Virus record (IMG/VR): IMGVR_UViG_3300046167_000825
Location: 186,001-250,000 of that record
Strand: one strand, 5' to 3'
Length of the DNA stretch: 64,000 nt
Part shown: in pieces, positions 6,315 to 63,674 of the stretch
Position numbering within the stretch: the stretch's first letter is position 1
How the letters are laid out: each line of letters opens with the position of its first letter
Translations under genes and position numbers: made by a program
Notes under the pieces: generated by a model
The model's database searches: none
What the model was told of the DNA's origin: nothing
Seen by the model: only the letters and a program-made list of their open reading frames with translations

Positions 6315-6540
6315 AGTTCTACTTGGCATATTATTCATTTTATTCGGTCTGATTCTATCCTTAAATGCCTCCCAAAAAGATATCGTCATAACCGAAGTTG
6401 AAGAGTATCGCCTAGAAACAAGGCTAAAAGAAGAAGCCCCTATTGTAGTAATGGAGAGTTATCCCTCCGAAGATAGGCTTTGTGATAATCTCGATGAAAT
6501 AATTGAGATTCTTGAAGAGAGTGGGATCGATAAAGAGTAG
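6283..6540 (+). CDS. small membrane-anchored or secreted acidic protein
   Basis: VLLGILFILFGLILSLNA hydrophobic segment. Confidence 0.55.
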   Translation: MSSKTFSQVPRVLLGILFILFGLILSLNASQKDIVITEVEEYRLETRLKEEAPIVVMESYPSEDRLCDNLDEIIEILEESGIDKE

Positions 6541-6552
6541 TGTTTCCGTATA
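6524..6552 (+). promoter_or_regulatory. class A promoter GGATCG-N17-CGTATA
   Basis: exact bipartite motif upstream of the ABC-GNAT gene. Confidence 0.8.
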
Positions 6553-6578
6553 TTTCCTACACAATTTAGGAGGTGTAT

Positions 6579-7682
6579 ATGTCAATATTTGACGAACTAC
6601 AAAACAAACCGAAGAAGAAAGTCTTTGTGTCTGTTGACCGTGACGAGTTCACGGAAACAATATCAAACGCTTTCGATTATGAGTTCACTGGTCGCTCCGA
6701 GTTCACAACTTGGACAATGCCCACAGTACCTAGCAATTTTGGTGTGGGTGTTATCGTGGGGGACAGTGGCACGGGTAAATCCTTACTTCTGAAAGAGTTT
6801 GGTGACCCCGAAACAGTGAAATGGCAGAAACGAAAAGCAGTGGCTTCTCATTTCAAAAACCCCGAACAAGCCCAGAAAAAACTGATGAGTGTGGGATTCA
6901 ATACCATCGAGTCTTGGCTGAAGCCCTACCATGTGCTTTCTATGGGTGAGAGATACAGAGCCGTAGTCGCTCGGACTGTGAGGTCGGGGGCAGTGTATGA
7001 TGAGTTCACGAGTGTCGTTGACAGAGACACCGCTAAAAGTTTGTCTGTGTCTTTACGGAGGCTCATAGACGATGAGGGATACACCAACATTGTGGTGGCT
7101 ACTTGTCACGATGATATTCTTCAATGGTTACAACCCGACTGGGTCTTCAATTCCAATACGGGTGAGTTGTCCGTTGGGAGGTCACTTCGGACACCGTGCG
7201 AACTTCAAATCTTCGGAACAGATTCATCTGCTTGGGGAATGTTTGCTCCGTATCACTATCTAAATCACTCTATCAATGCGGCTGCAAAATGTTTTGTTGC
7301 CACTTGGGAGGGGAAACTGGTTGGGTTCTCTGCCGTCTTGCCTTTCCCTTCTGCCATAAAACATGCTTGGCGTGGTCATCGGACAGTCATCTTCCCTAAG
7401 TTTCAAGGGATGGGTTTCGGGGTTCGACTCAGTGATGCCATTGGTGAGATTATGAAAGGAAGAGGGAAAAGGTATTTTTCGAGAACGGCTCATCCGAGAA
7501 TGGGTCAATATCGGGAAAACTCAACCCTTTGGAGAGCCACTTCAAAAAATCTTGTTTATCGCACAGACAATCGGGGAACTATTCGGGAATCCATGCGATA
7601 CAAAAAAGGTGAGGTAGTGCCGATGGATGAGAGAGATAGACGGAGAGTTTGCTATTCTCACGAATATCTAGGTCAAGTCTGA
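6579..7682 (+). CDS. ABC-type ATPase fused to GNAT acetyltransferase
   Basis: Walker A GDSGTGKS, signature LSMGE, Walker B VYDEFTSVVDR, H-loop ATCHDD; acetyl-CoA motif RTVIFPKFQGMGFG; no TM domain. Confidence 0.85.
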   Translation: MSIFDELQNKPKKKVFVSVDRDEFTETISNAFDYEFTGRSEFTTWTMPTVPSNFGVGVIVGDSGTGKSLLLKEFGDPETVKWQKRKAVASHFKNPEQAQKKLMSVGFNTIESWLKPYHVLSMGERYRAVVARTVRSGAVYDEFTSVVDRDTAKSLSVSLRRLIDDEGYTNIVVATCHDDILQWLQPDWVFNSNTGELSVGRSLRTPCELQIFGTDSSAWGMFAPYHYLNHSINAAAKCFVATWEGKLVGFSAVLPFPSAIKHAWRGHRTVIFPKFQGMGFGVRLSDAIGEIMKGRGKRYFSRTAHPRMGQYRENSTLWRATSKNLVYRTDNRGTIRESMRYKKGEVVPMDERDRRRVCYSHEYLGQV

Positions 7683-7743
7683 TGATTTGAATAATCATTT
7701 TATTCGATGTTGCATAGTGAAACCAACACTAGGAGTATTCACT

Positions 7744-9252
7744 ATGCAATTCATCGACATCTGGCAAAAACTAACAGAAGTACAAAAAGATCGAACATTG
7801 ATACGAGCGAAATATCGTGAGTGGAAACGATTAAACAAGACGATAACAAAGGCTTTCGGTTTGGATTACGCCCAAACGAAAGCCTTTGGTTTATGGGCTA
7901 TGTCTCGTGAGTGGGATGCGACTGAGGACATCTCTGAAGAAATCTCTGAAGGTTTTTCAGAAGAAGACACACTTGATATTCCAGATGAGCCGTTGCTCGT
8001 AGATTCTTGGGCACACAACCAGACTTATTGGTACGACAAAGACCGAAAGTTGTATGTCGTGCATCTGCCTTCCCAAAAGAAACCTCTTGCCATTCCAGAA
8101 AGTAAATGGAAATCCATTCGAGAAGCCTATTCCAATTGGGATGGGACACCATCAAGTGTCAATGAGATTTGTCGGAAGCAAGGTTTATCTCGTAGAACAG
8201 TTGTAGAACTATTGCGAGTGATGGGTGTGACTCATGATAGTTCACCTTACACAGACGAGGAGTTCTCAGAAAGGGGGGAAGGGGAACTTATAGAAGACCT
8301 TCTCCGTAAGAAGGAAGAAAAAGTCTTGATGAAAGCCCAACAGAAAGAGTGGAGTCGAGTCAAAAAAGATGCTGACAAATATCGTTCGGCTTCAATGATT
8401 GCCAATGATACCTTCAATCGTTTGCTTGACAGCACGAAAAAATACAATGTCCCCAAAGCCAAATGGAAGAAACCCACAAAAGAATCCTATTCGATTGTCA
8501 TATCTCCCACTGATTTCCACTGGGGTAAATATGCACCCGTTTATGGTGGTGACCCCTACAATCGAGATATCGCCAAAGAGAGATTGTGGGAAGCAACTCT
8601 AGGTATCCTTTCTCAAGTCAAAGAAAGAGGAGCACCCGATTATATTTATCTCGCTCTCGGGGGCGATGGCTTACACATTGATAACCAAAACAAAACTACA
8701 ACTCGTGGAACACTCCAAGATTGTGATGGGACACCAGAAGAACTGGCTTGGACTTGGGTTGAGATGTGTCGTGAATATGTTGATTTAGTTCGACAGTTCG
8801 CACCCGTAAAACTCTTTGTGGTTGCTGGTAATCATGATTATTATACTGCAACACTTCTCCGTGCAGCGATGAAAGGTTGGTTTCATCGAACAGAGGAAGT
8901 TGAGATTTGTGAGAGCATGTTGAATCGTCAATACGATGTTTACGGAACGAACTTGATTGCTTTCCTACACGGTGATATTGGTTCAGTGAAAGATTGGCCC
9001 GCTATCATTGCTGGGGAAGAGCGAGAGAAATGGGGTATCACCAAGAACAAGTTCATATTCACGGGACACTTCCACACAGAAAGAGAACTGCCGACCTTCG
9101 GTAATGTGACTGTGTATCGTATGCCATCCCTCGCTGGAACTGATGCTTGGCACGCAAGTAAAGGATACAAATCCCGTAAAGCATTGGTTGGGTATGTTGT
9201 ATCAAAGACACGAGGCGTTGTCGGTCAGATAATAGAACCCGTTGAGGAGTAA
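7744..9252 (+). CDS. calcineurin-like metallophosphoesterase with N-terminal HTH region
   Basis: DFHWG, GGDGLH, GNHD, HGD, GHFH; HTH-like SVNEICRKQGLSRRTV; AGGAG RBS before ATG 7744. Confidence 0.85.
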   Translation: MQFIDIWQKLTEVQKDRTLIRAKYREWKRLNKTITKAFGLDYAQTKAFGLWAMSREWDATEDISEEISEGFSEEDTLDIPDEPLLVDSWAHNQTYWYDKDRKLYVVHLPSQKKPLAIPESKWKSIREAYSNWDGTPSSVNEICRKQGLSRRTVVELLRVMGVTHDSSPYTDEEFSERGEGELIEDLLRKKEEKVLMKAQQKEWSRVKKDADKYRSASMIANDTFNRLLDSTKKYNVPKAKWKKPTKESYSIVISPTDFHWGKYAPVYGGDPYNRDIAKERLWEATLGILSQVKERGAPDYIYLALGGDGLHIDNQNKTTTRGTLQDCDGTPEELAWTWVEMCREYVDLVRQFAPVKLFVVAGNHDYYTATLLRAAMKGWFHRTEEVEICESMLNRQYDVYGTNLIAFLHGDIGSVKDWPAIIAGEEREKWGITKNKFIFTGHFHTERELPTFGNVTVYRMPSLAGTDAWHASKGYKSRKALVGYVVSKTRGVVGQIIEPVEE

Positions 9253-9254
9253 CA

Positions 9255-9689
9255 ATGAACATTCCAACTCAAGAAGAAATCTTTGCTCGCTTCCCTAAGT
9301 TGTTCTCTCAGAAAGACCTCTCCATACAAGAATCTTGTATGGCTTGGGGTCTCTCTCATGGAGAAGGTTGGAATCATATCATTGTTGAACTCTGTGAAGC
9401 CATCGAAGCCCATTATAAAGAACTAGCCGAAACTGGGAGGAAGATTATCCCCATCGGAGGAGATGTCCCAGAAGAACTAGAAGAAGACCAATACACTTAC
9501 GAAGTGGAGTTCGCACAAGTGAAATCAAAATGGTATCAGTTGAGGGTGTATTACATTGGTGGCGATAAAAAAGTTGCGGGTTTGGTGAGTGCCGCCGAAG
9601 AGAAATCTCTCGTGATTTGTGAGGGTTGTGGGAAGGATTTCCCCGATGAAAGGATGTCATGGTGTGACCCATGTCGAACTAAGAGATGA
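9255..9689 (+). CDS. conserved phage hypothetical protein with C-terminal Zn ribbon
   Basis: FAQVKSKWYQLRVYY, CEGCG...CDPC. Confidence 0.7.
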   Translation: MNIPTQEEIFARFPKLFSQKDLSIQESCMAWGLSHGEGWNHIIVELCEAIEAHYKELAETGRKIIPIGGDVPEELEEDQYTYEVEFAQVKSKWYQLRVYYIGGDKKVAGLVSAAEEKSLVICEGCGKDFPDERMSWCDPCRTKR

Positions 9690-9844
9690 TTTTGAGATAG
9701 AAATCTGAGGGTTTTTCTATTGATCTGAACATCCTAGTTCTGCGACACAAAATGAATATCAAATAAAAGGTTTTACCACTAAAAAAGTCTATTCTTATTA
9801 CATCCCAATATAGAAGAATTACATAGTAATCTTTAAGAAAAGTG

Positions 9845-9873
9845 CGGTTGCGTTTTTTTAAGAGACCCGTATA
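9845..9873 (+). promoter_or_regulatory. class A promoter CGGTTG-N17-CGTATA
   Basis: bipartite motif before the SWIM gene. Confidence 0.75.
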
Positions 9874-9909
9874 GATAGTGTCAATCAATCACTACTATCG
9901 GAGAATACT

Positions 9910-10458: not shown

Positions 10459-10474
10459 GGAGGCTTCTCGCTCA

Positions 10475-10522
10475 CGAGAAAAGCCACCCCGATATTACAT
10501 CGTGGGTGGCTCTCGTTTTTTT
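10475..10522 (+). terminator. rho-independent terminator
   Basis: CGAG-AAA-AGCCACCC...GGGTGGCT-CTCG stem followed by a T run. Confidence 0.7.
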
Positions 10523-10553
10523 GTTTGTTGGTTTCAAGAATCTGATGAACGGT

Positions 10554-10910: not shown

Positions 10911-10912
10911 GT

Positions 10913-11718: not shown

Positions 11719-11737
11719 AATAAACTCCTTGTTCTAG

Positions 11738-12697
11738 TTACACGGTTTTCTTGTGTTGAGTCGATCCCAATTTGGTCTGTAAATCCTCTGTTTTCACTTG
11801 TATGATTGTTCGTTTGTCTTGTGTCCAAGACACTTTCTCCAAACCCAATGCTTTTAATATCCGTTTCGTGTTCTCCCATAATTGATCTTCCACGCTGAAA
11901 GACACTGCCCCTTGTTGTTTCAAATGGGTGGCGACAAGATATGCTTTGTGTATCTCACATAAAATGGGGTAGTAGTTTATATGATTCAAACCAGAGGTTT
12001 GAATGACATCGTACCAAGCCTTGTTTGCGAGGTAAGGCACACAGTGTTCCATAAACCGTTTGAGGACACCCTCTCTACCAACGGGGGCATCAATATAATG
12101 CTGTTCTGTTCTCGTGGTGTAGATATACATTTCTTGGCATAATGAGGGGTATTTGATTGTTGCTTGAGGGTCACCAAAAGTTTGGAAGAAATGGTTATGA
12201 ACATAGTCTTCCAGAACAGTCTTAGAGAACCTTTGTAGAGGTCTCTCGCTCTCAATCTCCCACACTTTGTCGGCAAAGCCTTGTACTGATGGGTGGAACT
12301 CCCCAAAAGAGCCATTGTGGTGAACTCTATTATAGGGGTTGGCTAGAAAAAGTCTTACGGGATATCGTTGAAGTTCAATTCGGTTGTTCTTTATGAGGGG
12401 ATGAACAACACCAACTTTAGGGACGTTTTTAACTGGAAAGGTCAGTTCTGTTTTAGGTTGGAACGATGTTGGGAATCGCTCTGGGTTTTCCGAGTAATCC
12501 CTTTGATCAAAGTGGTGGTGAACCCATTTCGTTGAGAAGGATTCAATGTCACCATACTTAACACGAACGCCTAGATGATTACTTTCTTGTACGATGGCGG
12601 GGAAGTTGTATTCCCCCGATTTGTAAAAAAAGCAAACCCAAAGAAGGTCGCCTTTCGCTATTTCATTGTATGACAATCGCATTGCTTGTTTTGGCAT
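11738..12697 (-). CDS. hypothetical protein
   Basis: 319 aa ORF, first gene after the class A promoter at 12738. Confidence 0.75.
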   Translation of the reverse strand: MPKQAMRLSYNEIAKGDLLWVCFFYKSGEYNFPAIVQESNHLGVRVKYGDIESFSTKWVHHHFDQRDYSENPERFPTSFQPKTELTFPVKNVPKVGVVHPLIKNNRIELQRYPVRLFLANPYNRVHHNGSFGEFHPSVQGFADKVWEIESERPLQRFSKTVLEDYVHNHFFQTFGDPQATIKYPSLCQEMYIYTTRTEQHYIDAPVGREGVLKRFMEHCVPYLANKAWYDVIQTSGLNHINYYPILCEIHKAYLVATHLKQQGAVSFSVEDQLWENTKRILKALGLEKVSWTQDKRTIIQVKTEDLQTKLGSTQHKKTV

Positions 12698-12737
12698 GGG
12701 GTATTCCTTTTTTTTGTGAGAAGTGCTAGACTTTTCT

Positions 12738-12766
12738 TATACGGAAACCCAGAGGAGAAACAACTG
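12738..12766 (-). promoter_or_regulatory. class A promoter CAGTTG-N17-CGTATA
   Basis: minus-strand bipartite motif. Confidence 0.7.
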
Positions 12767-12768
12767 CT

Positions 12769-14160: not shown

Positions 14161-14171
14161 TATTAAAAATA

Positions 14172-14184
14172 TATAGGAAGATTA
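14172..14184 (-). promoter_or_regulatory. class B promoter TAATCTTCCTATA
   Basis: exact motif 11 bp before the ATG, which has no obvious RBS. Confidence 0.6.
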
Positions 14185-14228
14185 TTCTGCTGGTGTGACT
14201 CTAACCGTAGTTCAAGAATCTTTGAGGG

Positions 14229-15571: not shown

Positions 15572-15579
15572 AAGGATAA

Positions 15580-19772: not shown

Positions 19773-19801
19773 TATACGGAAAGAGGGCTTAGAAGCGATC
19801 C
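19773..19801 (-). promoter_or_regulatory. class A promoter GGATCG-N17-CGTATA
   Basis: exact motif on the minus strand. Confidence 0.8.
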
Positions 19802-20043: not shown

Positions 20044-20072
20044 TATACGGAAAACTTAAAAAGATGCAACCG
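20044..20072 (-). promoter_or_regulatory. class A promoter CGGTTG-N17-CGTATA
   Basis: bipartite motif on the minus strand. Confidence 0.75.
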
Positions 20073-26399: not shown

Positions 26400-27100
26400 T
26401 AGGTAATAGAATCCCCATACCCATTTAAGGGTTGGTGTTATTTTCGGTTATTCCTTCCCAAAGGAATTGAGTCATGGGCAAGTAGTTTTTTATTTCCGTA
26501 GAAGTCTTTGTGTTTGTCTATGTAGAACTTGTATTCTTATTCGTATTCTCATTGTTATTTGGTTTCTTATTTTTCTTGGGTTTCTTGGGCTTGGTTGTAA
26601 TTTGATACAAACCAATTCTATATACTAATTCTAATTCTAATTACTATATACAATTAAGAACTTATAGAAGATCCCTCTATTATCTTCTTTCCGTTCTCTT
26701 TCTGACTGGTGAGGCTTCTATTCTTTCTTTTCATCTCTCAAAGAAATAGAACTCGGATTTCTTGGTCATCAGAAAGGTCACTCTTGAGATTGGGACGGAT
26801 TTGTTTTCCATACCGAACCCTTATCAAGAAGTGGCTTCCCTTTCGGGAAGGTATCGTGGTTATTTTTAATGTTGGAAAAGAACATATCTAAATCGGGTGG
26901 AACTTTTAACCACCTCACCCTATTAAGGGATTATAGTTCTATCAGAAACAAAAGAGACACCATAGAGATATGGGATCAATCAATCTATCTGGGAAGAAAC
27001 TATCAGAAGACTCAGACGGTTTTGAGAATACTCTATTTTGTTAGGGATTGCAAAACTTTTCTATCTCGGTATCTTTGATAGGAAGAAAAACAACGGAGGA
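26400..27100. other. AT-rich, largely non-coding strand-switch region, candidate replication origin
   Basis: TATATAC-(TAATTC)2-TAATTA-C-TATATAC core at 26619-26651; several ATCAGAA-like repeats; gene direction diverges here. Confidence 0.4.
26638..26650 (+). promoter_or_regulatory. class B motif TAATTACTATATA
   Basis: exact motif, but inside an AT-rich core so it may be chance. Confidence 0.3.
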
Positions 27101-27105
27101 AAGGG

Positions 27106-27426
27106 ATGCAGAACCAATTATTTTTTTCAAGAGAGAACGCACATCTGTTAGCAGAAGAAGTCTTTAAGATTATATCTGGGAAATCGAACCCAGTGTTCCC
27201 TCATTCATCGAAGGGGATGCCCTCCCTTTATGTTTTGATGGGAAATACCAAAATAGACACCGATCAATATCATCGGTGTGTCCTACCCGTAATAGAGAAG
27301 GAGGATTTGCAAATCCTCCGAACCCCTAGATCAAGGGAGTTCCTAAAGGATCGAACACGAACTCAGATATTCATTGATCGGATAGGAGGCTATCTGACAG
27401 ATTCTTTTATTGCAGAAGGCTTCTAG
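27106..27426 (+). CDS. hypothetical protein
   Basis: GGAGG RBS. Confidence 0.65.
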   Translation: MQNQLFFSRENAHLLAEEVFKIISGKSNPVFPHSSKGMPSLYVLMGNTKIDTDQYHRCVLPVIEKEDLQILRTPRSREFLKDRTRTQIFIDRIGGYLTDSFIAEGF

Positions 27427-27454
27427 GGTTGATTGGGCTGTGGGTTTCCGTATA
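27426..27454 (+). promoter_or_regulatory. class A promoter GGGTTG-N17-CGTATA
   Basis: motif before the clamp-loader operon. Confidence 0.75.
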
Positions 27455-31573: not shown

Positions 31574-31602
31574 GGATCGGTTCAGACCTCTTATTTCGTA
31601 TA
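31574..31602 (+). promoter_or_regulatory. class A promoter GGATCG-N17-CGTATA
   Basis: exact motif before recD2. Confidence 0.8.
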
Positions 31603-31622: not shown

Positions 31623-33983
31623 ATGGCTGTTTATAGTGGAAATGTGGAAACTATCATCTTCTCTAACGCAGAAGATAATTATTATATTTTAAGGATGAAA
31701 CTGGATAAGTCACCGATAGGTATTCCAAACTCCCTCGTGGTTCGTGGGAAGGTATCGGGTTTGTCTATCAAAAAAGGGTCTTGGTTTTCGTTTGATGGTG
31801 TTTTGGATAGTCACCCAAAACATGGCAAGCAAATGAAGATACGGAAAGCACCCGTACAGAAGAAGAACTTATCGGGTTCTGAAACAAGAGCCATCTTACG
31901 GTCACATGGTGTTTCTGAATTGATTGCTGATCAGTTGTTTCTCAAGTTCGGGGATTTGACCTATTCAAAATTGAACTCACCCGATGCTCTCAAGCATTTG
32001 AGTTCCTTGAAGAATGTCACTCAGATCACAGCAGAGTTCATTCTTCAAAGGTGGCGGTCTTACATCGCTTTCTTTGAAGCCGTAGAGTTCTTTGAGGAAG
32101 TGGGGATACATCAAAAGAAGTATGACTTGGTATGGAAAACCTTTGGGGATAGAGCCAAAGAAATCCTTTCGACCAATCCTTGGCGATTGACGAGAATTGA
32201 GGGGATTACCTTTGAACATGCCGATGCCGTTGCTAAGAAACTCCATCTCCCTTTGAGGGGCGTTGAGAGGGTACAAGGGGCTATTTTATCGGCTTTGAAC
32301 TCTTGGAGAGGTGGTATGGGTCATCTGTACCACACCGTCAAGGAAATCCAAGATAGCATAGAGAAGATGATGGGTGTTTCGATTCGTAGGGATACCGTCA
32401 TTGACTGTTTGAAAAAACTAGACGAGGATGGTGATTTGGTTTTTGAATCTTATCTCACTTGTGGGGGTGAACTACACGAATGTGTTTACACGAAGTGGAA
32501 TCATCGAATGGAGCATAAAGGGTCTGAGATGCTTTATCAAAGACACAAGTCAGCCCAAGTGAGCAAAAGCCTTTCGGAATTGGAGCGGTACAAGTACTCT
32601 CTTATCCGTTGCGAACACCCCGATATTGAGGCTCATAATCTCAAGGTCAGTTCGTTGGAAGATTGTGTTCGTGTGGCTTTGGACTTTGAGTGTGAGGTCA
32701 ATTCTATCTCGTTATCGAAAGCCCAGTACCAAGCCGCAATTAATGCTCTTATCTACCCCGTGTCGATTATTACGGGGTTGCCAGGGACGGGTAAGACGAC
32801 CACTTTGCGTATCGTTGTGAAGGTTTTTCAACGGGCTGGTGTGACTTTCAAGTTGGTTTCGCCAACGGGTATCGCTTCCAAACGCCTTCATCAAGTCACT
32901 GGTGTCGAAGCCTCAACCATTCATAGAGCCTTTGGTTCAAAGGGTGGTAAAGGGGATGATGAAGAAAGAGAACAGACTTATTATGGTGTGGTCGGTGAGT
33001 CTGTTGCTAGTGTGAAGGCTGGTGAGAATGAGAAATGGACTAATGTTCTCCCCGATCAAGTTCTCATTTGTGATGAGGCATCTATGGTCGATCAACACTT
33101 GCTTTATCGTATGCTAACGGGAACGAATGGGGACTGTCGTCTAGTGCTTGTAGGTGACTCGGCACAGTTGCCGAGTGTGGGTGCTGGGAATGTCCTCCGA
33201 GAAATGATTCAAGCGAACTTATTTCCAACCAGTTCTCTCACAGAGATTTTCCGTCAGAGTGATACAAGTGACATTGTTTATGCTGCTCACGATATCTATA
33301 AAGGGAATGTCCCCGAACTGAAAGCATCCACTGATCTAGACTTCGTGTTCCTCCCTATCTCTAGTGAAAGCCAAATACTTGATGCGATCAAAAAACTTTC
33401 TCTCCGTATCTTCAAGGCGAGGGAGAGGTTTCAAGTGATGTCTCCACGACACAGTGGCACATTGGGTGTAACCAACCTCAACACACACCTCCGAGAAATC
33501 TTGAACCCAGAGAAGCACAATCAGAATTACATCCGTGTGGGTGACCAAATACTCCGTGAAGATGACCGTGTCATGATAATCCGTAACGATTACGGGAAAG
33601 GGGTCTTCAATGGCGATACGGGCAAGGTGTATCGTATCCAACCCGATAAGAAGGTCATTGTGAAGATACACGGAGAGAACCCCTTCTATGTAGATTTCAC
33701 GCCCAAAGAGGTCTATCAGTATCTCCGTTTGGCTTATGCCACCACTGTCCATAAAATGCAAGGACAAGAAACAGATATGATAATCCTTCCAATGGTACAA
33801 GGGTTTCGCTCCCAACTCCAACGCAACCTATTCTATACGGCTATCACACGAGCCAAGAAGCGTGTCATTCTGTTGGGTCATGCTTCAGCCATTGAGAGGG
33901 CTGTGATGAACTCTCGTGAAGATGTTCGCAACACTCTTTTGAAAGAACGCTTATTTTCCCAAGCCGAAAGGGATCGAGATTGA
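31623..33983 (+). CDS. recD2: RecD2-like SF1B DNA helicase
   Basis: N-terminal OB/HhH region (STNPWRL, FEHADAVA); ITGLPGTGKTT, CDEASMVD, VGDSAQLPSVGAG, EIFRQ, LAYATTVHKMQG, YTAITRAK. Confidence 0.93.
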   Translation: MAVYSGNVETIIFSNAEDNYYILRMKLDKSPIGIPNSLVVRGKVSGLSIKKGSWFSFDGVLDSHPKHGKQMKIRKAPVQKKNLSGSETRAILRSHGVSELIADQLFLKFGDLTYSKLNSPDALKHLSSLKNVTQITAEFILQRWRSYIAFFEAVEFFEEVGIHQKKYDLVWKTFGDRAKEILSTNPWRLTRIEGITFEHADAVAKKLHLPLRGVERVQGAILSALNSWRGGMGHLYHTVKEIQDSIEKMMGVSIRRDTVIDCLKKLDEDGDLVFESYLTCGGELHECVYTKWNHRMEHKGSEMLYQRHKSAQVSKSLSELERYKYSLIRCEHPDIEAHNLKVSSLEDCVRVALDFECEVNSISLSKAQYQAAINALIYPVSIITGLPGTGKTTTLRIVVKVFQRAGVTFKLVSPTGIASKRLHQVTGVEASTIHRAFGSKGGKGDDEEREQTYYGVVGESVASVKAGENEKWTNVLPDQVLICDEASMVDQHLLYRMLTGTNGDCRLVLVGDSAQLPSVGAGNVLREMIQANLFPTSSLTEIFRQSDTSDIVYAAHDIYKGNVPELKASTDLDFVFLPISSESQILDAIKKLSLRIFKARERFQVMSPRHSGTLGVTNLNTHLREILNPEKHNQNYIRVGDQILREDDRVMIIRNDYGKGVFNGDTGKVYRIQPDKKVIVKIHGENPFYVDFTPKEVYQYLRLAYATTVHKMQGQETDMIILPMVQGFRSQLQRNLFYTAITRAKKRVILLGHASAIERAVMNSREDVRNTLLKERLFSQAERDRD

Positions 33984-33999
33984 ACTCCAACTCCGTATA
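33971..33999 (+). promoter_or_regulatory. class A promoter GGATCG-N17-CGTATA
   Basis: exact motif. Confidence 0.8.
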
Positions 34000-35082: not shown

Positions 35083-35111
35083 GGATCGCTTTGCAATCTT
35101 CTATTCGTATA
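35083..35111 (+). promoter_or_regulatory. class A promoter GGATCG-N17-CGTATA
   Basis: exact motif. Confidence 0.8.
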
Positions 35112-37852: not shown

Positions 37853-37881
37853 GGATCGTTTTGAGGGGCTTTTTCGGTATA
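37853..37881 (+). promoter_or_regulatory. class A promoter GGATCG-N17-GGTATA
   Basis: one mismatch in the -10 box. Confidence 0.7.
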
Positions 37882-41203: not shown

Positions 41204-42148
41204 TTACTGTTTCCGTCAATAGAAAGGTTGAGCCGATACGGAATGTTCTCTCTTTGTTTGATGGGATTTCATGTGGGCAACTCGCACTCCAAAGAGCCAA
41301 AGTTCCCTATGAGAACTACTACGCTTCTGAGATAGAAGATGCCTCCATCAAGGTCACCCAAGAGAACTTCCCTAAGACAAGACAACTCGGTGATGTGACC
41401 AAGATAACGGATTTCCCAAAGGTGGATTTACTCATCGCTGGGTCACCGTGTCAAGGCTTTTCAAAATCTGGGAGCAAACTGAACTTCGATGACTCTCGAT
41501 CAGTTCTGTTTTTTGAGTTCTTACGGGTTCTGAAACTCACGAAACCGAAGTATTTCTTGCTTGAAAATGTCATTATGGATCAATGGGCTACCAATGTGAT
41601 TTCATATTTTTTGCGAACCAGCCCCTACGAACTGAACTCCTCTTTGGTTTCAGCCCAGAACCGTCCTCGATACTACTGGACAAATCTCCCACGCCCCTCC
41701 ATAACCGAAAAGAGTTTGTGCCTAGATGACATCGCTGGTCAAAGTTCCAAGAATCTCCTCTCGGATTCTTCTCTGGACTTCATTCCGTGTCCGTCTTCCA
41801 ACACAGATACGGGGTTGATTTTTGTAGGGGGGTTCAAGACACGGAATCAGACCATGTGGATAGAGAATGGCAAACTGTTATCACGGAACTTTCGACAAGG
41901 CTATCGTGTGTATTCGAGTAAAGGTAAGTCTAGCACTCTCACAGCCAGTGGTGGGGGTCTAGGGGGGTGCAGTGGCTTTGTACCAGTTCGGAGATGCGAT
42001 ACGCCCTTTGACACGATTGGAATGTGAAAGATTGCAGACCGTTCCCGACAACTACACCAAATCTATTTCTGAGGGTCAAGCCAAGAAAGCATTGGGGAAT
42101 GGCTTCACGGTAGATATGATTGCTGAGATTTTTAAGGGGTTGGTTTGA
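41200..42148 (+). pseudogene. dcm: second C5 cytosine methyltransferase with a +1 frameshift near 41977
   Basis: motifs I-VIII in frame; removing one T from GGCTTTGTAC restores GLYQFGDAIRPLTRLECERLQTVPDNYT...ALGNGFTVDMIAEIFKGLV* (motifs IX-X). Confidence 0.85.
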
Positions 42149-42165
42149 CCCCCACTTTCCGTATA
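42137..42165 (+). promoter_or_regulatory. class A promoter GGGTTG-N17-CGTATA
   Basis: motif before sbcD. Confidence 0.75.
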
Positions 42166-43208: not shown

Positions 43209-44138
43209 ATGGGAAGAAAAGTTAAGGTTCTCTATTGGTCAACAATGGAGAGATATGAGAAATGCCCCCAGATGTTTTTGTGGGGTCGTGGTTGGGAAGG
43301 CATCGACTTGGGTTACGGTGTGGGTGAGCCTATCCCCCCACCTAAGCCGTCTTCTATGCACCATGCCGTGATGGGCATTGTGATTGCGAAGGCAATGGAG
43401 GATCTCTATAACGATGAGTTGTGGCGAGACCCCACCAATCTCAAAGAAAATCTTGAGAAGAGCATTAGGAAAGAGTTCAAGTTTCTGACACACACGAAAT
43501 ACATTGATTGGGAAAAAGCCCCTAGCGAAGAAGAAATGCTCACGGTTTGCTTGGAAGGTATTCGTGGGTTTCTTCCCACGATGAAACACCACAAACTGTT
43601 GGGGCAGTATTCACGGAGTGAAGTGAATATGATAGCCGAACTAGACGGTGGAGTGAAGGTGGGTGGTAGAGCAGACCTCGTGATTATCCGAAATCAAGAA
43701 GTAGGCATCTACGATGGGAAGAACTCTTTGAGCAAAGGTAAATACACCTCTCCAGACCAGTTGAGATGGTATGCTATGTTATATCGGGCAACCACTGGTG
43801 ACACTCCTCACAAACTGGGCTTCATCTATTATAGATATCCTTACGGTATGGACAATGAGGGTGAGATGGAACAAGGGGTTGATTTCGTGGAGTTCACCCC
43901 CCACCATTTAGATTCTTTAGAGGAGCGAGCCAAAGAAACAATGATGGGTATGCACTCAAAATCTTTTGACCCCACTCCAAAAGCAAAACATTGTCAGTTC
44001 TGTGATTATGAATCCATCTGTGATGCTCGTAAAGAGCAGAAGGCAGTAAACTCGGAGAAAAGAAAGAAGAACTTCGATAAGAAATTGGGCATTGAAGGGT
44101 CGACCGAAAAGTTTGTTCAATTTAAATTGCCGAAGTAG
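43209..44138 (+). CDS. PD-(D/E)XK exonuclease (RecB/Cas4-like)
   Basis: GRADLV, IYDGK, QLRWYA, CQFCDYESIC. Confidence 0.85.
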   Translation: MGRKVKVLYWSTMERYEKCPQMFLWGRGWEGIDLGYGVGEPIPPPKPSSMHHAVMGIVIAKAMEDLYNDELWRDPTNLKENLEKSIRKEFKFLTHTKYIDWEKAPSEEEMLTVCLEGIRGFLPTMKHHKLLGQYSRSEVNMIAELDGGVKVGGRADLVIIRNQEVGIYDGKNSLSKGKYTSPDQLRWYAMLYRATTGDTPHKLGFIYYRYPYGMDNEGEMEQGVDFVEFTPHHLDSLEERAKETMMGMHSKSFDPTPKAKHCQFCDYESICDARKEQKAVNSEKRKKNFDKKLGIEGSTEKFVQFKLPK

Positions 44139-44166
44139 GATCGTTCTTGGGAAGTCTTTTCGTATA
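44138..44166 (+). promoter_or_regulatory. class A promoter GGATCG-N17-CGTATA
   Basis: exact motif. Confidence 0.8.
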
Positions 44167-48036: not shown

Positions 48037-48065
48037 CGGTTGTGTCTTTCGATTAGATCCGTATA
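48037..48065 (+). promoter_or_regulatory. class A promoter CGGTTG-N17-CGTATA
   Basis: bipartite motif. Confidence 0.75.
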
Positions 48066-48852: not shown

Positions 48853-48881
48853 CAGTTGAAATCCTTTTCATTTTTCGTATA
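48853..48881 (+). promoter_or_regulatory. class A promoter CAGTTG-N17-CGTATA
   Basis: motif before dnaX. Confidence 0.75.
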
Positions 48882-50705: not shown

Positions 50706-51310
50706 ATATGTGGTGGAGTGGACATAAAATACTAGAGCCTCACGAGTTGGAGAATCGCTTTTCTACTGAGGATTGTATCTTCAATAATGGGATTACCTTC
50801 ACAGAGGTGATGTCTGAGGAGATGAAAGCACAAGTTGATAAGATTAAATCGTTTTTGGATATGATTCCTAGACGGGAAGCCGATTTTGTTGAGTTGTACT
50901 ACTTCCAACACATGAAGCAAACGGATATCGCAAACTTGTTTTGTGTGACCCAACCGACTGTCTGTTATCGTCTTCAAAGGGCTTCTGCTCGGATTAAGTT
51001 CCTTGTAGAACTCCCCGATTTAACCATAGCACAGATTCAGAATGACCTTGAAGAAGTCTTGGTTGACCCTCTCGATGTGAAGATCATGGTGCAAATGTAT
51101 CAAACGACATGTCAATCAGAAGTGGCGAAGAATCTCAATGTTTCTCAAGGGCTAGTTCGACATAGATTTATTAGGTCTATCAAACGATTGGGTTGTGACG
51201 GCTACGATGAACTGGTTGCCGTTTATAAAAAAATCTCCGAAAACTTGAACATCCTCAGAGAAGTGCAACGACCCTCTCTTTCCGAAACTTCTTTCATTGT
51301 CTTACACTAA
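50702..51310 (+). CDS. tandem sigma-region-4-like HTH protein
   Basis: LYYFQHMKQTDIANLFCVTQPTVCYRLQRA and TCQSEVAKNLNVSQGLVRHR. Confidence 0.7.
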   Translation: MNMWWSGHKILEPHELENRFSTEDCIFNNGITFTEVMSEEMKAQVDKIKSFLDMIPRREADFVELYYFQHMKQTDIANLFCVTQPTVCYRLQRASARIKFLVELPDLTIAQIQNDLEEVLVDPLDVKIMVQMYQTTCQSEVAKNLNVSQGLVRHRFIRSIKRLGCDGYDELVAVYKKISENLNILREVQRPSLSETSFIVLH

Positions 51311-58013: not shown

Positions 58014-58023
58014 GGGGTGATAA

Positions 58024-60602: not shown

Positions 60603-60611
60603 GAGTTTTTT

Positions 60612-60875
60612 ATGTCATCCCCACACAGAGCAGACTATCGTTTAATTCATCGTTTTATGTTGCAATACTCAAAGAGTAAAGCCTCAAAAAATAACCTCGT
60701 GTCACCCACTGATGCTGACATTGAGAAAGTTCTCCGTGCTTTCCATCATTTTGGGGGTTCTTGGGAGAGATTGTTCAAGGGAAGCATTAAAGATATGGTT
60801 GTCTTGAAGAAGATTGTCAAAGTTGGGGTCAAAAAGAAACTCTTCAACCTTGCTCCATCTTGGGATAGGGTATAG
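60612..60875 (+). CDS. hypothetical protein
   Basis: AGGAG RBS. Confidence 0.7.
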   Translation: MSSPHRADYRLIHRFMLQYSKSKASKNNLVSPTDADIEKVLRAFHHFGGSWERLFKGSIKDMVVLKKIVKVGVKKKLFNLAPSWDRV

Positions 60876-60884
60876 TGATTCACT

Positions 60885-61184
60885 ATGGGAAGATACAGAG
60901 CAAGAAACACAGACCCCGTTGAAAGGGATGTTCATAAGAACATAGCCGAAGCCGAGCGTTATCTGAAAAGAGCGTTGTCGGTTCTTTCTTCTGTTCGTGG
61001 GAATCCCTCTATACGGAAAGCACGGTATAATCAACTAGAGCAAATGCTCCAAGAATCCGTGAAGGTTTTATCTTCTCCTCCTCGATTGACACATGCTCAT
61101 GATAAAAACGACCCCGACTTGAATCCAAAGGTCGCAGAGGAACAACGGAAAAAACGAATGGAACGGAAAAGAGGTGATAAATGA
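60885..61184 (+). CDS. hypothetical basic protein
   Basis: ATGA overlap with the portal gene. Confidence 0.65.
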   Translation: MGRYRARNTDPVERDVHKNIAEAERYLKRALSVLSSVRGNPSIRKARYNQLEQMLQESVKVLSSPPRLTHAHDKNDPDLNPKVAEEQRKKRMERKRGDK

Positions 61185-62863
61185 CAAAAAAATCTGGTGT
61201 GGCAGTCGGTAAAGTTCCTTCTCGTGCGAAAGTACACACGGGAAAACCTCGTAAAGTTGTGGCTAGTTCAATGAAAGTTGGTGGGTTACAGACCTATTCT
61301 GGTGGCGAAGGGTCTGGTGGGAACTTCTATTCTCCCGAACTGAGTACCGATTTCCTTGAACTCCCACAGAGTATGCACGAGAGATGGAATTACTTCCGTT
61401 TCTTCTATCGTTCAGAACCTTTCGTGGGTCAAGCGATTGATCTTCACACCGAACTTCCCCTTTCAAAAATCCGTCTGGGTTTCCCGAACTACATCAAAGA
61501 CAGAGAGATGGCGAAGGAGGCATTGGACTTCTGTCAGAAGTGGTCTAGGAAAATCGGATTACTTCACCGTTTGATTGAGATCGTCCATGAATACAATCTC
61601 ATTGGTGAAGTGTTTATCTTCATGGAAGATGTGACTTCAGACCCACCCGATGATCTTAAATATGAAGTCAGACGAGAACTGCTTGATGATGGGACAGTCC
61701 AAGAGGAACTTGTAGAACGAGAGGATGCCAAAGAACTGCAAGTGAAATGGTTGAAAAAGAACTACAAGGGTTGGACAGCCCTCCGAGTTCTCCCCCCAGA
61801 GCAAACCCATGTTCAATCGTTTCCATTCACGGATGAGAAGATTATTGAACTTATCCCCGATTCTAAAACAAAGGACATTATCTCACAAGCAGATAGTGGT
61901 GACCCAACAGCAAAGCGTATTGTGGACTCCATGCCTAGAGGTGTGGTGGAAGCCGTCCTTGAAGGGAAGAATATCCCCTTGAACACCGATCCAGATGCGG
62001 GTTCTTTCGTCTGCTATCTCGCTCGTAAGAAATCACAGTATGAGGACAGAGGGCATTCCATCCTTGAGAGATGTATCCGAACTCTCGTGTTCCGAGATAA
62101 ACTTCGTCAAGCCAACACTTCTATCGCTTCAAGGCACATGACCCCCATCCGTTTGGTCTATGGTGAAGATATGGATCAAGCCGATGTGGAAGCATTGAGA
62201 GAGCAAGTGGATTTGGCTCTTGCTGATCCCGACTTCTCTATCATAGCGAACTTTGAAATCCGATGGGAGGAAATGGGTTCTGACCAACGCCTCCTTGATC
62301 TTGGTTCTGAATATGACCTCACTGATCGTCAGTTGTATGCTGGTCTTGGTGTGACAGAAGGCTTACTCTCTGGTGAGAGTTCTTATAGTGGTGACCGTAT
62401 CAACTTGGAAGTCATCAACACGAGGTACATGCTTCTCCGAGAAATCCTACAAGACTTGGTTGAGGAGAAAATGCTCAAACCAATGTGTGCTAGGATGGGT
62501 TTCATTGAGGAAGATGAATACGGAAATGAACATGTGGTTTATCCCACACTTTCTTTCACAAGACTTGCACTCAGAGATAACAATGACACTTTCGATGCCT
62601 TGTTCAATCTCTATCAGAAGGGTTCATTGGATGTGGATATCATCTTGGAACTCTTGAACATTGACCCAGTAGCAACCAAAGAGAAACTAGAACGAGATAT
62701 GTTCACACTCAACGATAGTCAGTTCAATGAGGTTCTACGAGGTATCTATGGTGAGGCTGGTCGTGCATTAGCCGAGAACTCAGATGCCCTTGAAAAGATA
62801 GCCGAGAATCTAGGTCTGACCTACGAGAAGCCCGAAGAAGAAGGTGGCGGTGGTAGATTCTGA
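61181..62863 (+). CDS. portal protein
   Basis: 560 aa after terL; RFFYRSEPFVGQAIDLH, EYNLIGEVF, RGHSILERC. Confidence 0.75.
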   Translation: MTKKSGVAVGKVPSRAKVHTGKPRKVVASSMKVGGLQTYSGGEGSGGNFYSPELSTDFLELPQSMHERWNYFRFFYRSEPFVGQAIDLHTELPLSKIRLGFPNYIKDREMAKEALDFCQKWSRKIGLLHRLIEIVHEYNLIGEVFIFMEDVTSDPPDDLKYEVRRELLDDGTVQEELVEREDAKELQVKWLKKNYKGWTALRVLPPEQTHVQSFPFTDEKIIELIPDSKTKDIISQADSGDPTAKRIVDSMPRGVVEAVLEGKNIPLNTDPDAGSFVCYLARKKSQYEDRGHSILERCIRTLVFRDKLRQANTSIASRHMTPIRLVYGEDMDQADVEALREQVDLALADPDFSIIANFEIRWEEMGSDQRLLDLGSEYDLTDRQLYAGLGVTEGLLSGESSYSGDRINLEVINTRYMLLREILQDLVEEKMLKPMCARMGFIEEDEYGNEHVVYPTLSFTRLALRDNNDTFDALFNLYQKGSLDVDIILELLNIDPVATKEKLERDMFTLNDSQFNEVLRGIYGEAGRALAENSDALEKIAENLGLTYEKPEEEGGGGRF

Positions 62864-62876
62864 TAATCTATCTATA
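62864..62876 (+). promoter_or_regulatory. class B motif TAATCTATCTATA with no downstream sense gene
   Basis: exact motif right after the portal stop. Confidence 0.45.
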
Positions 62877-62921
62877 TCGTCTTATAGATGAATAAGAGAG
62901 AAGTCGTCAAAAACTTCAACT

Positions 62922-62955
62922 AAAAAAGAAAGGGGAGTCCCTCAACTCCCCTTTC
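62922..62955 (-). terminator. rho-independent terminator for the minus-strand genes
   Basis: GAAAGGGGAGT-CCCTCA-ACTCCCCTTTC with an A run on the left. Confidence 0.75.
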
Positions 62956-62978
62956 AACCACAAACTTGGCTTAATGTA

Positions 62979-63233
62979 CTACTTGGGTTTCCCTCCCCGA
63001 CAAGGAGTACACCAACTTTGTGGAATCGTTTTACCCTTGATAACTCGCAAACCAAAAGACTCTACAACTTTCCCTATCTTTTTACATTTGGGGCATGCCT
63101 TGTATTCTAGTTCATATTGGTCAATGGCTTCAATGAGCGTGTTTTTCGATATTTTCCCGTTGCCAATTCGGTGATCAAGTACAAGCACCATACCATTGGG
63201 TGTGTTTATCCTTTTACATATTTCGTCACTCAT
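62979..63233 (-). CDS. small zinc-finger protein
   Basis: CPKC...FGLR...PQSWCTPCR. Confidence 0.7.
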   Translation of the reverse strand: MSDEICKRINTPNGMVLVLDHRIGNGKISKNTLIEAIDQYELEYKACPKCKKIGKVVESFGLRVIKGKTIPQSWCTPCRGGKPK

Positions 63234-63241
63234 GTCTTCTC

Positions 63242-63625
63242 CTATGCAGATTTGCGTTGTTGTGAAATGATTTGATGAGTACCAACTAGGGAGTTGTTGA
63301 GGGCATGCTCTATGGCTCTTTGGTCTATATCAAGACGGTCATCAAGCCATCGACCTAAAGCGATGGTGTGCTTACATAAGCGACCGAAACCACCAGCCTC
63401 ACAAGTGCAACGAACACTCTTTGTTTTGAGATTCACTCTCGTGGTATAAACTTCCGAGCCAGATATGGGTGTGTGGGTCATCCCCGTAATCAATCCCGCA
63501 TCGACATCGAATGACGGTGACATCACAGCCACCTTTGATGCTTTTATTCGGGTGTCCTTTGACACTTTGCTCTCAAGCCGTTGGATGGTTTCTCGTAATA
63601 TCGTAGTTTGGTTCAGTATATTCAT
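63242..63625 (-). CDS. SWIM zinc-finger protein
   Basis: CTCEAGGFGRLCKHTIAL; AAGGAG RBS. Confidence 0.85.
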   Translation of the reverse strand: MNILNQTTILRETIQRLESKVSKDTRIKASKVAVMSPSFDVDAGLITGMTHTPISGSEVYTTRVNLKTKSVRCTCEAGGFGRLCKHTIALGRWLDDRLDIDQRAIEHALNNSLVGTHQIISQQRKSA

Positions 63626-63645
63626 AGCAATCTCCTTGTGCTTTA

Positions 63646-63674
63646 TATACGGAGAAACCTTTTCGATGCGATCC
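63646..63674 (-). promoter_or_regulatory. class A promoter GGATCG-N17-CGTATA
   Basis: exact motif on the minus strand. Confidence 0.8.

What the first reader, a model, noticed from the sequence alone, without database searches (positions are those of the whole stretch)
6524..63674. Fifteen copies of a phage-specific bipartite promoter with an invariant 17-bp spacer
Seen: [GC][GA][AG]T[CT]G-N17-CGTATA at 6524, 9845, 12738(-), 19773(-), 20044(-), 27426, 31574, 33971, 35083, 37853 (GGTATA), 42137, 44138, 48037, 48853 and 63646(-). Every copy has exactly 17 nt of spacer, points toward the next gene, and ends within ~70 bp of a start codon. The -35 box has two forms: GGATCG (8 copies) and [GC][GA]GTTG (7 copies). 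It heads nearly every replication/recombination operon. Inference: the recognition sequence of a phage-encoded sigma factor (a middle promoter), distinct from host TTGACA/TATAAT.
Basis: partly seen in the sequence, partly recalled or inferred. Interest (0 to 1): 0.7.

Follow-up and report, generated by a model that had tools for sequence, protein, structure and literature searches.

The report
Phage-specific bipartite promoter, non-late genes
An uncultured marine giant phage puts one strictly spaced two-box promoter (GGRTYG, 17 bases, CGTATA) in front of its replication, recombination and small accessory genes; the signal is real and conserved in relatives, probably needs one of the phage's own sigma factors, and is a new example of a familiar strategy.

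Summary
SRRTYG-N17-CGTATA occurs 14 times in the window (0 expected), the GGTATA variant at 37853 is real, and two weaker variants exist (11767-, 27045+).

The whole 289-kb phage record has 49 strict copies plus about 12 variants. All 49 have a 17-nt spacer, with none at N13-16 or N18-21. All 49 face a Shine-Dalgarno, start codon and ORF within 90 nt, against 16% of random positions.

Related marine phage contigs keep the boxes and the spacing at orthologous genes while spacers diverge (-10 100%, -35 81%, spacer 44%). It is a promoter.

It drives replication, recombination and nucleotide genes and many small genes. Tail and other large genes use a second, single-block element (rATAATCTnTCTATAT). 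Sigma-70-consensus promoters are depleted and no phage RNA polymerase was found.

The phage has two full sigma-70-family genes (window 5237-5989, and one outside the window). A phage sigma is the best reading (about 0.6), but which sigma is unresolved and "middle" timing is unproven. The two -35 forms interchange at one orthologous promoter, so they are one degenerate box. CGGTTG copies form an extended subclass. No usable transcript data exist.

The parts
6524..6552 (+). Promoter, GGATCG-N17-CGTATA. It heads ORF 6579-7682 (367 aa, ABC-ATPase/GNAT family).
   Evidence: Orthologous promoter kept in L115 (GGATCG), L114 (GGGTTG) and L117 (GGGTCG) with diverged spacers.
9845..9873 (+). Promoter, extended subclass B: TG-CGGTTG-CgTTTTTTTAAGAGACC-CGTATA plus leader TGTCAATCAATCA. 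It heads ORF 9910-10458 (182 aa).
   Evidence: Kept as CGGTTG-N17-CGTATA in L115, L114 and L117.
11739..11767 (-). Variant promoter GGATCG-N17-CGTGTA. It heads ORF 11272-11718 (148 aa).
   Evidence: PWM scan score 15.6; sequence read. The orthologous site in L115 and L114 is a strict CGTATA copy.
12738..12766 (-). Promoter CAGTTG-N17-CGTATA. It heads ORF 11738-12697 (319 aa). A terminator-like hairpin lies upstream at 12800-12822(-).
19773..19801 (-). Promoter GGATCG-N17-CGTATA. It heads ORF 19277-19756 (159 aa).
20044..20072 (-). Promoter, subclass B (GTG-CGGTTG-CA...). It heads ORF 19825-20010 (61 aa).
27045..27073 (+). Weak candidate variant GGATTG-N17-GGTATC before ORF 27106-27426 (106 aa). 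Tentative.
   Evidence: PWM score 12.4, inside the range of control hits; sequence read.
27426..27454 (+). Promoter GGGTTG-N17-CGTATA. It heads 27485-27646, the clamp-loader-like 27648-28235 and 28226-29149, upstream of ribonucleotide reductase 29246-31201.
31574..31602 (+). Promoter GGATCG-N17-CGTATA. It heads the 786-aa RecD/Dda-like helicase 31623-33983.
33971..33999 (+). Promoter GGATCG-N17-CGTATA, overlapping the last codons of the helicase gene. It heads 34017-34367 and 34354-35052.
35083..35111 (+). Promoter GGATCG-N17-CGTATA with a 67-nt leader. It heads 35178-35912, the RuvC-like resolvase 35986-36657 and the UvsX-like recombinase 36482-37849.
37853..37881 (+). Variant promoter GGATCG-N17-GGTATA. 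It heads the SbcC-like 37899-39098 and the DNA methyltransferase 39220-40137.
42137..42165 (+). Promoter GGGTTG-N17-CGTATA. It heads the SbcD-like nuclease 42185-43138 and the exonuclease 43209-44138.
44138..44166 (+). Promoter GGATCG-N17-CGTATA. It heads an 83-aa ORF, the sliding clamp 44438-45583 and the ATPase 45583-46212.
48037..48065 (+). Promoter, subclass B (GTG-CGGTTG). It heads 48099-48290 and 48300-48788.
48853..48881 (+). Promoter CAGTTG-N17-CGTATA, just after an intrinsic-terminator hairpin (48811-48847). It heads the clamp loader 48899-50182, 50172-50705 and the sigma region-4-only protein 50708-51310.
63646..63674 (-). Promoter GGATCG-N17-CGTATA. It heads ORF 63242-63625 (127 aa).
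5237..5989 (+). Sigma-A: a full sigma-70-family gene (250 aa; regions 1.2, 2, 3 and 4). It is one candidate reader of the promoter. Its own operon (starting about 3693) is headed by the other promoter type, not by a CGTATA promoter.
   Evidence: Pfam and NCBIfam. PDB alignments show the region 2.3/2.4 signature FSTYAIWWVRQSIQR. Orthologues at 61-90% identity lie in contigs that carry the motif. Upstream elements are conserved.
50708..51310 (+). Sigma region-4-only protein (200 aa; HTH at residues about 45-97 plus about 100 aa of unknown tail). It is not a complete sigma. It is encoded in the clamp-loader operon behind the 48853 promoter.
   Evidence: Pfam PF04545/PF08281 only; no region 2. PHROG sigma-factor hit limited to region 4. 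It has a 28%-identical homologue in distant relative G001.

Best explanation
What it is. These sites are the promoters of the non-late genes of an uncultured marine jumbo phage. Those genes cover replication, recombination, nucleotide metabolism and many small genes. The record is 289 kb, about two thirds of the genome.

How it most likely works. The host core RNA polymerase carries a phage-encoded sigma-70-family factor. That factor binds a degenerate -35 box (tTG-sGrTyG) and an extended -10 box (tyC-CGTATA) held exactly 17 bp apart. Transcription starts a few bases downstream, giving short leaders of 10-60 nt that contain little besides the ribosome site.

Subclass B. A subclass (TG-CGGTTG-CA, a T-tract, AAGAG, and a conserved TGTCAATCAATCA leader) heads small genes that are clustered on both strands. 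It probably marks the strongest or earliest units.

Proposed cascade. Products made from these promoters include the sliding clamp, the clamp loader, a region-4-only sigma-like protein and the second sigma. These would then switch on the second promoter class (rATAATCTnTCTATAT) in front of tail and other large genes.

Shown: the motif, its fixed geometry, its placement, its conservation in relatives, the gene classes behind each promoter type, and the presence of two sigma genes.

Inferred: that a phage sigma rather than a host sigma reads it, which sigma that is, the position of the start site, and the timing.
For: Motif statistics and geometry:
- Searches give 49 strict copies, all at N17, and all in front of SD + start + ORF.
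- The motif extends beyond the two hexamers.

Phylogenetic footprint:
- Contigs carrying sigma-A orthologues at 61-90% identity (L114, L115, L117) have the same two boxes at orthologous genes. Conservation is -10 100%, -35 81%, spacer 44% and flanks 41-47%.
- Contigs carrying sigma-B orthologues at 51-53% identity (L119, L120, L121) have 17, 11 and 5-9 copies. CGTATA and N17 are invariant, while the -35 drifts to CGGTTG-AG, CCGTTG-AGAA and CGGTTC.

The boxes are not sigma-70 consensus:
- There is no T at -7.
- Sigma-70-consensus sites are depleted: 25 against 33.5 expected in 20 kb, and 53 against 86 genome-wide, with only 3 of them intergenic.

Polymerase and sigma content:
- No phage RNA polymerase domain was found.
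- There are two full sigma genes. Both fall in virus-only sigma clusters.

Distant relatives:
- LR745208.1, G001 and G002 have no sigma-A or sigma-B orthologue and none has the motif.

Gene content behind the promoters:
- Window operons behind this promoter.
- The second promoter class drives the tail sheath and other large genes.
Against: - No transcription start or expression data exist. The only RNA run holding the phage gave two tiny contigs.
- No host-type promoter was found that could make the first sigma. Sigma-B sits behind a CGTATA promoter in all four lineages seen. Sigma-A sits behind elements of the other class. How transcription begins is therefore unexplained in the 66% of the genome that is held.
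- G001 is complete and has no detectable sigma-70-family gene. It still carries about 40 copies of an analogous bipartite promoter, GTTGCAAAG-N13-AAGTGTTATA plus a TGTCGATAA leader. Such promoters therefore do not require a recognisable phage sigma.
- The region 4.2 helix of sigma-B is invariant while the -35 box drifts.
- The host is unknown, so a host sigma with this specificity cannot be excluded.
Confidence: 0.6

Rival explanations
1. The promoter is read by a sigma factor of the unknown marine host, either housekeeping or alternative. The phage sigmas would serve other promoters, for example the rATAATCTnTCTATAT class.
For: - No canonical sigma-70 promoters are present to start the programme.
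- This class heads what look like the earliest genes and also the sigma-B operon.
- G001 has an analogous promoter without any detectable sigma gene.
- Sigma-A keeps the group 1/2 region 2.3/2.4 signature. That would fit a TATAAT-like box such as rATAAT or TCTATAT better than CGTATA.
Against: - The -35 box differs between close relatives of similar G+C content: CGGTTG, CCGTTG, CGGTTC, and TAACGT in L143. That pattern looks like evolution with the phage lineage.
- The boxes carry very high information and an invariant spacer, unlike the degenerate promoters of housekeeping sigmas.
- The motif is absent from relatives that lack the two sigmas.
- A -10 without T at -7 is not known for primary sigmas (own knowledge).
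Confidence: 0.2
2. Two different phage sigmas share the -10 box and split the promoters by -35 form (GGATCG against xGGTTG). This is what the reader's two forms imply.
For: - There are two full sigma genes.
- The CGGTTG copies form a coherent subclass with extra conserved spacer and leader sequence and longer leaders.
- That subclass is maintained at orthologous sites for two genes.
Against: - GGATCG, GGGTTG and GGGTCG replace each other at the orthologous promoter of the 367-aa gene. CAGTTG, GGATCG and CGGTTG do so at the 319-aa gene.
- The two sigmas differ strongly in the -10-reading region: FSTYAIWWVRQSIQR against FDTYARQWIFAYMQQ. An identical CGTATA box for both is therefore unlikely.
Confidence: 0.1
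3. The motif is a repeated element of another kind, such as a regulator-binding site, a terminator or a mobile repeat, and not a promoter.
For: No start-site data exist.
Against: - Its orientation and its distance to SD + ATG are fixed in 49 of 49 copies.
- The two boxes are conserved and the 17-bp spacer is free to vary.
- The boxes are not complementary to each other, so they form no hairpin.
- Some copies sit directly after terminator hairpins.
- There is no paralogy between the genes behind them.
- No Rfam family matches in the window.
Confidence: 0.05

Closest known systems
Bacillus phage SPO1 middle and late promoters, read by phage sigmas gp28 and gp33/gp34 on host core polymerase
   Same: Bipartite, phage-specific boxes about 17-18 bp apart and unlike the host consensus. 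They are used for replication-type genes. A cascade of phage sigma-70-family proteins works on the host core enzyme (own knowledge; the SPO1 switch is summarised in PMC13401047).
   Different: The box sequences are different. SPO1 starts from clear host sigma-A early promoters, and none are visible here. The sigmas are not orthologous. Timing here is unknown.
phiEco32 gp36-dependent and phage 7-11 phage-specific promoters (TAATGTATA; TGTGATGTTATA)
   Same: Phage-encoded sigma. The -10-like core contains GTATA or GTTATA (PMC4331800, read). The sigma gene itself lies behind such a promoter. G001's box AAGTGTTATA resembles the 7-11 motif.
   Different: Those are single-block elements without a -35 box, present in only 6-10 copies. 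Those phages also have host-type early promoters and an anti-sigma. Here there is a strict -35 box at 17 bp and about 60 copies.
Bacillus subtilis ECF sigma-W promoters (TGAAAC-N16-CGTATA)
   Same: The -10 box has the same letters (CGTA confers sigma-W selectivity) and the spacing is rigid. A T-tract just downstream of the -35 box modulates selectivity (PMC5758882). Subclass B also has such a T-tract.
   Different: The -35 box lacks the AAC motif. Neither phage sigma is an ECF sigma: both align with group 1-3 sigmas. Sigma-B's Atlas model matches full-length group 1-3 sigmas and the SigK family. The resemblance is in letters only.
T4-type late transcription (gp55 + gp33 + sliding clamp; TATAAATA)
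   Same: This is context for the second promoter class. That class is a single block without a -35 box in front of structural genes. The clamp, clamp loader and a region-4-like small protein are all made from the earlier class.
   Different: No gp55 or gp33 orthologue was identified. The element (rATAATCTnTCTATAT) is longer and different. This analogy was not tested.

Membership tests
Sigma-70-family-dependent bipartite promoter | Two conserved boxes separated by a fixed spacer of about 16-18 bp whose sequence is free to vary | tested here: met
   49 of 49 copies at N17 and none at other lengths. Spacer identity between orthologous sites is 44%, against 81% for the -35 box and 100% for the -10 box.
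Sigma-70-family-dependent bipartite promoter | Lies upstream of genes, on the same strand, at operon starts | tested here: met
   49 of 49 copies are followed by SD + start + ORF within 90 nt, against 15.8% of random positions. Terminator hairpins lie just upstream of two window copies.
Sigma-70-family-dependent bipartite promoter | Transcripts start 5-10 nt downstream of the -10 box | not testable with these tools
   Only one RNA run holds the phage, and at trace level.
Sigma-70-family-dependent bipartite promoter | A cognate sigma is available and shown to direct initiation | tested here: inconclusive
   Two full sigma genes are present and co-occur with the motif in relatives. No binding or transcription test was possible; complex prediction was not folded. 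G001 has an analogous promoter without a detectable sigma.
Host housekeeping sigma-70 promoter (TTGACA-N17-TATAAT) | -35 box close to TTGACA, and -10 box with A at -11 and T at -7 | tested here: not met
   The -35 box is sGrTyG. After CGTATA the next two positions are unconserved and T is depleted. Consensus sigma-70 sites are under-represented.
ECF (group 4) sigma promoter | AAC-containing -35 box, CGT-type -10 box, and a cognate two-domain ECF sigma, usually autoregulated | tested here: not met
   CGT-type -10 box: yes. AAC -35 box: no. Both sigmas have group 1-3 type region 2 (QEGNIGL...TYA). Sigma-B's Atlas model matches full-length group 1-3 sigmas and the SigK family. Sigma-B lies behind its own promoter class, which is compatible with autoregulation but not specific to it.
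Phage 'middle' promoter (temporal class) | Active after host-dependent early promoters and dependent on an early phage product | not testable with these tools
   There are no time-course data. No early host-type class was found in the 289 kb held. The record is only about 66% complete.
Phage RNA polymerase promoter (T7-like or phiKZ/AR9-like) | The phage encodes its own RNA polymerase | tested here: not met
   PF00940, PF00562 and PF00623 gave no hit in the record. The PF00940 control rang nowhere, so only the multisubunit searches are informative. Very divergent enzymes could also be missed, and a third of the genome is not held.

The most novel reading that the evidence does not exclude
The phage runs its whole programme without any host-sigma promoter. 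One phage sigma is made late: sigma-A's operon sits behind the late-type element in all five lineages seen. That sigma would be carried in the virion and injected. It would redirect host core polymerase to the CGTATA promoters from the first minute. The second sigma, the region-4-only protein and the clamp, all made from CGTATA promoters, would then turn on the late class. An injected sigma factor would be a new way of starting a phage infection.
Probability: 0.1. Interest if true: 0.8.

Novelty: new member of a known kind. Interest (0 to 1): 0.45.

Why it matters
The motif gives a ready operon map for an abundant, uncultured clade of marine jumbo phages: about 60 strong promoter calls in 289 kb. 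It separates non-late from late genes by sequence alone.

It also provides clean parts for testing sigma-promoter specificity: a fixed 17-bp spacer, an invariant -10 box, and a -35 box that drifts between relatives.

The apparent lack of any host-type promoter, with two phage sigmas each encoded behind a phage-type promoter, poses a concrete and testable question: how does transcription of such a genome begin?

Tried and rejected
- RNA evidence. The one metatranscriptome holding the phage (X22) gave two short contigs on 31500-36000 and nothing on a six-promoter stretch. There is no start-site information.
- Complex prediction of both sigmas with a promoter duplex was not folded. It is not evidence either way.
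- The strict subclass-B pattern searched across IMG/VR found only fragments of this same phage plus chance hits.
- Cultured relatives. Megablast against phage records found nothing. The nearest records by terminase are an uncultured 485-kb phage at 64% identity and Tunturiibacter phage Tunturi_5 at 29%. Neither sigma has a close cultured relative.
- Host identification failed. No terminase relative exists in species genomes, and the metagenome records behind my loci cannot be searched.
- Search for a third, host-type promoter class. A sigma-70 scan, a relaxed scan and EM on the remaining upstream regions found none.
- AGATTCTT as a promoter-associated element was rejected. The 8-mer is 13-fold over-represented everywhere in the genome, including inside genes on both strands.
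- Subclass B as a by-product of gene duplication was rejected. There is no BLASTP similarity among the genes behind those promoters.
- ECF membership of the sigmas was rejected.
- G002 (66% G+C) showed no enriched upstream motif and was uninformative.
- Deciding between sigma-A and sigma-B failed. Co-variation of region 4.2 with the -35 box was uninformative. The absence of a sigma-A orthologue from the long sigma-B contigs could not be trusted, because the homologue search also missed a known orthologue, the L143 sigma.
- Gene calls outside the tool ORF list come from my own heuristic caller. A few were wrong. The SD + start test does not depend on them.

Full report
**1. What the window is**

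The window is bases 186,001-250,000 of a 289,014-bp IMG/VR virus record. CheckV rates the record about 66% complete. G+C is 42-46%.

DNA runs that hold it are seawater and marine metagenomes from many studies. Megablast found no similar phage record. By large terminase, the nearest records are an uncultured 485-kb phage (LR745208.1, 64% identity) and, far behind, Tunturiibacter phage Tunturi_5. It is an uncultured marine jumbo phage.

**2. The observation**

It matched 0 times in each of 100 shuffles. The GGTATA variant at 37853 is real.

The whole record has 49 strict copies, and none in a reversed-sequence control. A two-block weight-matrix scan adds about 12 variants that each differ by one or two letters. 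Two of these are in the window: 11739-11767(-) and, weaker, 27045-27073(+).

The spacer is invariant. There are 49 copies at 17 nt and none at 13-16 or 18-21.

All 49 copies are followed on the same strand by a Shine-Dalgarno sequence, a start codon and an ORF of at least 30 codons within 90 nt. Only 15.8% of random positions meet this test. Only 6 of the 35 CGTATA hexamers without the -35 box do.

**3. Conservation in relatives**

Sigma-A (window 5237-5989) has orthologues at 61-90% identity in marine metagenome contigs. Three of these loci are syntenic with window 1-16,000. They carry the same two boxes at the same 17-nt distance in front of the orthologous genes, while the spacers have diverged.

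For seven comparisons with the two distant loci, identity is:
- -10 box: 100%
- -35 box: 81%
- spacer: 44%
- flanks: 41-47%

Contigs carrying orthologues of the second sigma (51-53% identity) are also full of the motif, with 17 strict copies in 20 kb in L119. In L120 the -35 box has become CCGTTG-AGAA in 11 of 13 CGTATA sites. In L121 it is CGGTTC, GGGTCG or GGATCG.

A more distant contig, L143, has a sigma-A-like gene at the syntenic place. It keeps CGTAT(A/G) but has TAACGTAAAATTTT where the -35 box would be.

The -10 box and the geometry are therefore clade-wide. The -35 box evolves with the lineage.

**4. One box or two?**

At the promoter of the 367-aa gene the -35 box is GGATCG in this phage and L115, GGGTTG in L114, and GGGTCG in L117.

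The CGGTTG copies are nevertheless a distinct extended subclass:
- they have a preceding TG;
- CA and a T-tract follow the box;
- AAGAG and ayC precede CGTATA;
- they have a conserved TGTCAATCAATCA leader;
- their leaders are longer (median 38.5 nt against 26.5).

They cluster at 143-165 kb of the record in front of small genes on both strands. The genes behind them are not paralogues. The subclass is kept at orthologous sites.

**5. What the promoters drive**

In the window they head operons for:
- an ABC-ATPase/GNAT protein;
- clamp-loader subunits and ribonucleotide reductase;
- a RecD/Dda-like helicase;
- a RuvC-like resolvase and a UvsX-like recombinase;
- SbcC- and SbcD-like nucleases and a DNA methyltransferase;
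- a Cas4-like exonuclease;
- the sliding clamp;
- the large clamp loader together with a sigma region-4-only protein.

Long stretches of the record with large genes have none (13-68 kb, 109-143 kb, 250-289 kb). Those genes carry a second element instead: a single block, rATAATCTnTCTATAT, 15-45 nt before the start codon. It has about 40 good copies, against 17 hits in the control at the same threshold. It precedes the tail sheath, a tail-needle-like protein, a methyltransferase, many large unknown proteins and a tRNA-Ala gene. It is conserved in relatives too.

So there are two promoter classes, non-late and late-like.

**6. Who reads it?**

Sigma-70-consensus sites are depleted. There are 25 against 33.5 expected in the first 20 kb. 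Genome-wide there are 53 against 86 expected, with only 3 of them intergenic. No third motif emerged from the remaining upstream regions. No phage RNA polymerase domain was found, although the T7-type search had no positive control.

The record has two full sigma-70-family genes:
- Sigma-A (250 aa) has regions 1.2, 2, 3 and 4. It is closest to RpoS and RpoD and keeps FSTYAIWWVRQSIQR in region 2.3/2.4.
- Sigma-B (207 aa, record 155283-155906) reads FDTYARQWIFAYMQQ at the same place.

Both belong to virus-only clusters. Sigma-B's Atlas model matches full-length group 1-3 sigmas and the SigK family. Neither is an ECF sigma.

Distant relatives without sigma-A or sigma-B orthologues lack the motif: LR745208.1, G001 and G002. 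This fits a phage sigma, but it is confounded by phylogenetic distance and by host.

It is also weakened by G001. That phage is complete, has 31% G+C and has no detectable sigma. It still has about 40 copies of its own long bipartite promoter, GTTGCAAAG-N13-AAGTGTTATA followed by TATGTCGATAATGAC, which resembles subclass B in layout.

**7. Wiring**

Sigma-B lies in an operon headed by a CGTATA promoter in all four lineages seen: this phage, L119, L120 and L121. Sigma-A's operon is headed by late-type elements in five lineages. The clamp, the clamp loader and the region-4-only protein are behind CGTATA promoters.

Either sigma could read CGTATA, and I could not decide between them. Co-variation of region 4.2 with the -35 box was uninformative for both. 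How transcription starts is unexplained in the part of the genome that is held.

**8. Comparison with known systems**

The arrangement works like the SPO1 middle promoters, which are phage-sigma-dependent and bipartite. It also resembles the phiEco32 and 7-11 phage-specific promoters, whose cores TAATGTATA and TGTGATGTTATA share GTATA or GTTATA. Those are single-block and few in number.

The -10 letters equal the sigma-W box of B. subtilis, and the T-tract of subclass B recalls the spacer T-tract effect described for ECF sigmas. The ECF membership tests fail.

**9. Verdict**

- A real, conserved, phage-clade-specific promoter class: about 0.95.
- Read by a phage-encoded sigma on host core polymerase: about 0.6.
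- 'Middle' timing and the identity of the sigma: open.

It is a new member of a known kind and of moderate interest.

Noticed in passing
window 1344-1359, 2944-2959, 7690-7705, 14171-14186(-), 15769-15784(-), 25352-25367(-), 51306-51321, 53301-53316, 62862-62877; about 40 copies in the whole record: A second promoter-like element, rATAATCTnTCTATAT. It is a single block with no -35 box, 15-45 nt before start codons. It precedes the tail sheath, other large genes, a tRNA-Ala gene and the sigma-A operon. It is conserved in relatives and is probably the late class.
   Followed up: partly
window, 36 copies (e.g. 6506, 27399, 48472, 14214-); whole record, 167 copies: The 8-mer AGATTCTT (mostly AGATTCTTG) is 13-fold over-represented. 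It occurs on both strands, in sense, antisense and intergenic positions, about once per 1.7 kb. The same excess is seen in the six relatives that share the CGTATA promoter, but not in more distant ones. It contains GANTC. Its function is unknown. A second 8-mer, CTAGTTCG, is 12-fold over-represented (103 copies).
   Followed up: partly
window 50708-51310 (+): A protein with only sigma region 4 plus an unknown 100-aa tail. It is encoded directly after the clamp-loader genes and has a homologue in distant relative G001. It may be a late-transcription co-factor in the manner of T4 gp33.
   Followed up: partly
G001 (IMGVR_UViG_3300046779_001841, loci L034-L049): A 316-kb relative with 31% G+C and no detectable sigma-70-family gene. 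It has about 40 copies of a very long conserved bipartite promoter: GTTGCAAAG-N13-AAGTGTTATA-nnTATGTCGATAATGAC.
   Followed up: partly
L120 (Logan ERR15116881 contig) and L143 (JGI 3300046171 contig): Relatives keep CGTATA and the 17-nt distance but have changed the -35 box, to CCGTTG-AGAA in L120 and to TAACGTAAAATTTT in L143. These are natural specificity variants that could be paired with their sigma sequences.
   Followed up: partly
window 9874-9909, 20009-20043(-), 48066-48098, and record 143-165 kb: The leaders behind subclass-B promoters share an A/C-rich sequence, TGT(C/A)AATCAATCA. It is also present in relatives and, as TGTCGATAATGAC, in G001. It could be an initial-transcribed-region signal or a translation signal.
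   Followed up: no
window 6579-7682 (+): The 367-aa ABC-ATPase/GNAT fusion protein belongs to a very large family. It has 3,796 homologues at E<=1e-20, mostly on large phage-like metagenome contigs.
   Followed up: no
record 51021-61151 (-), outside the window: A 3,376-codon ORF, one of several very large genes of unknown function in the late-type regions.
   Followed up: no
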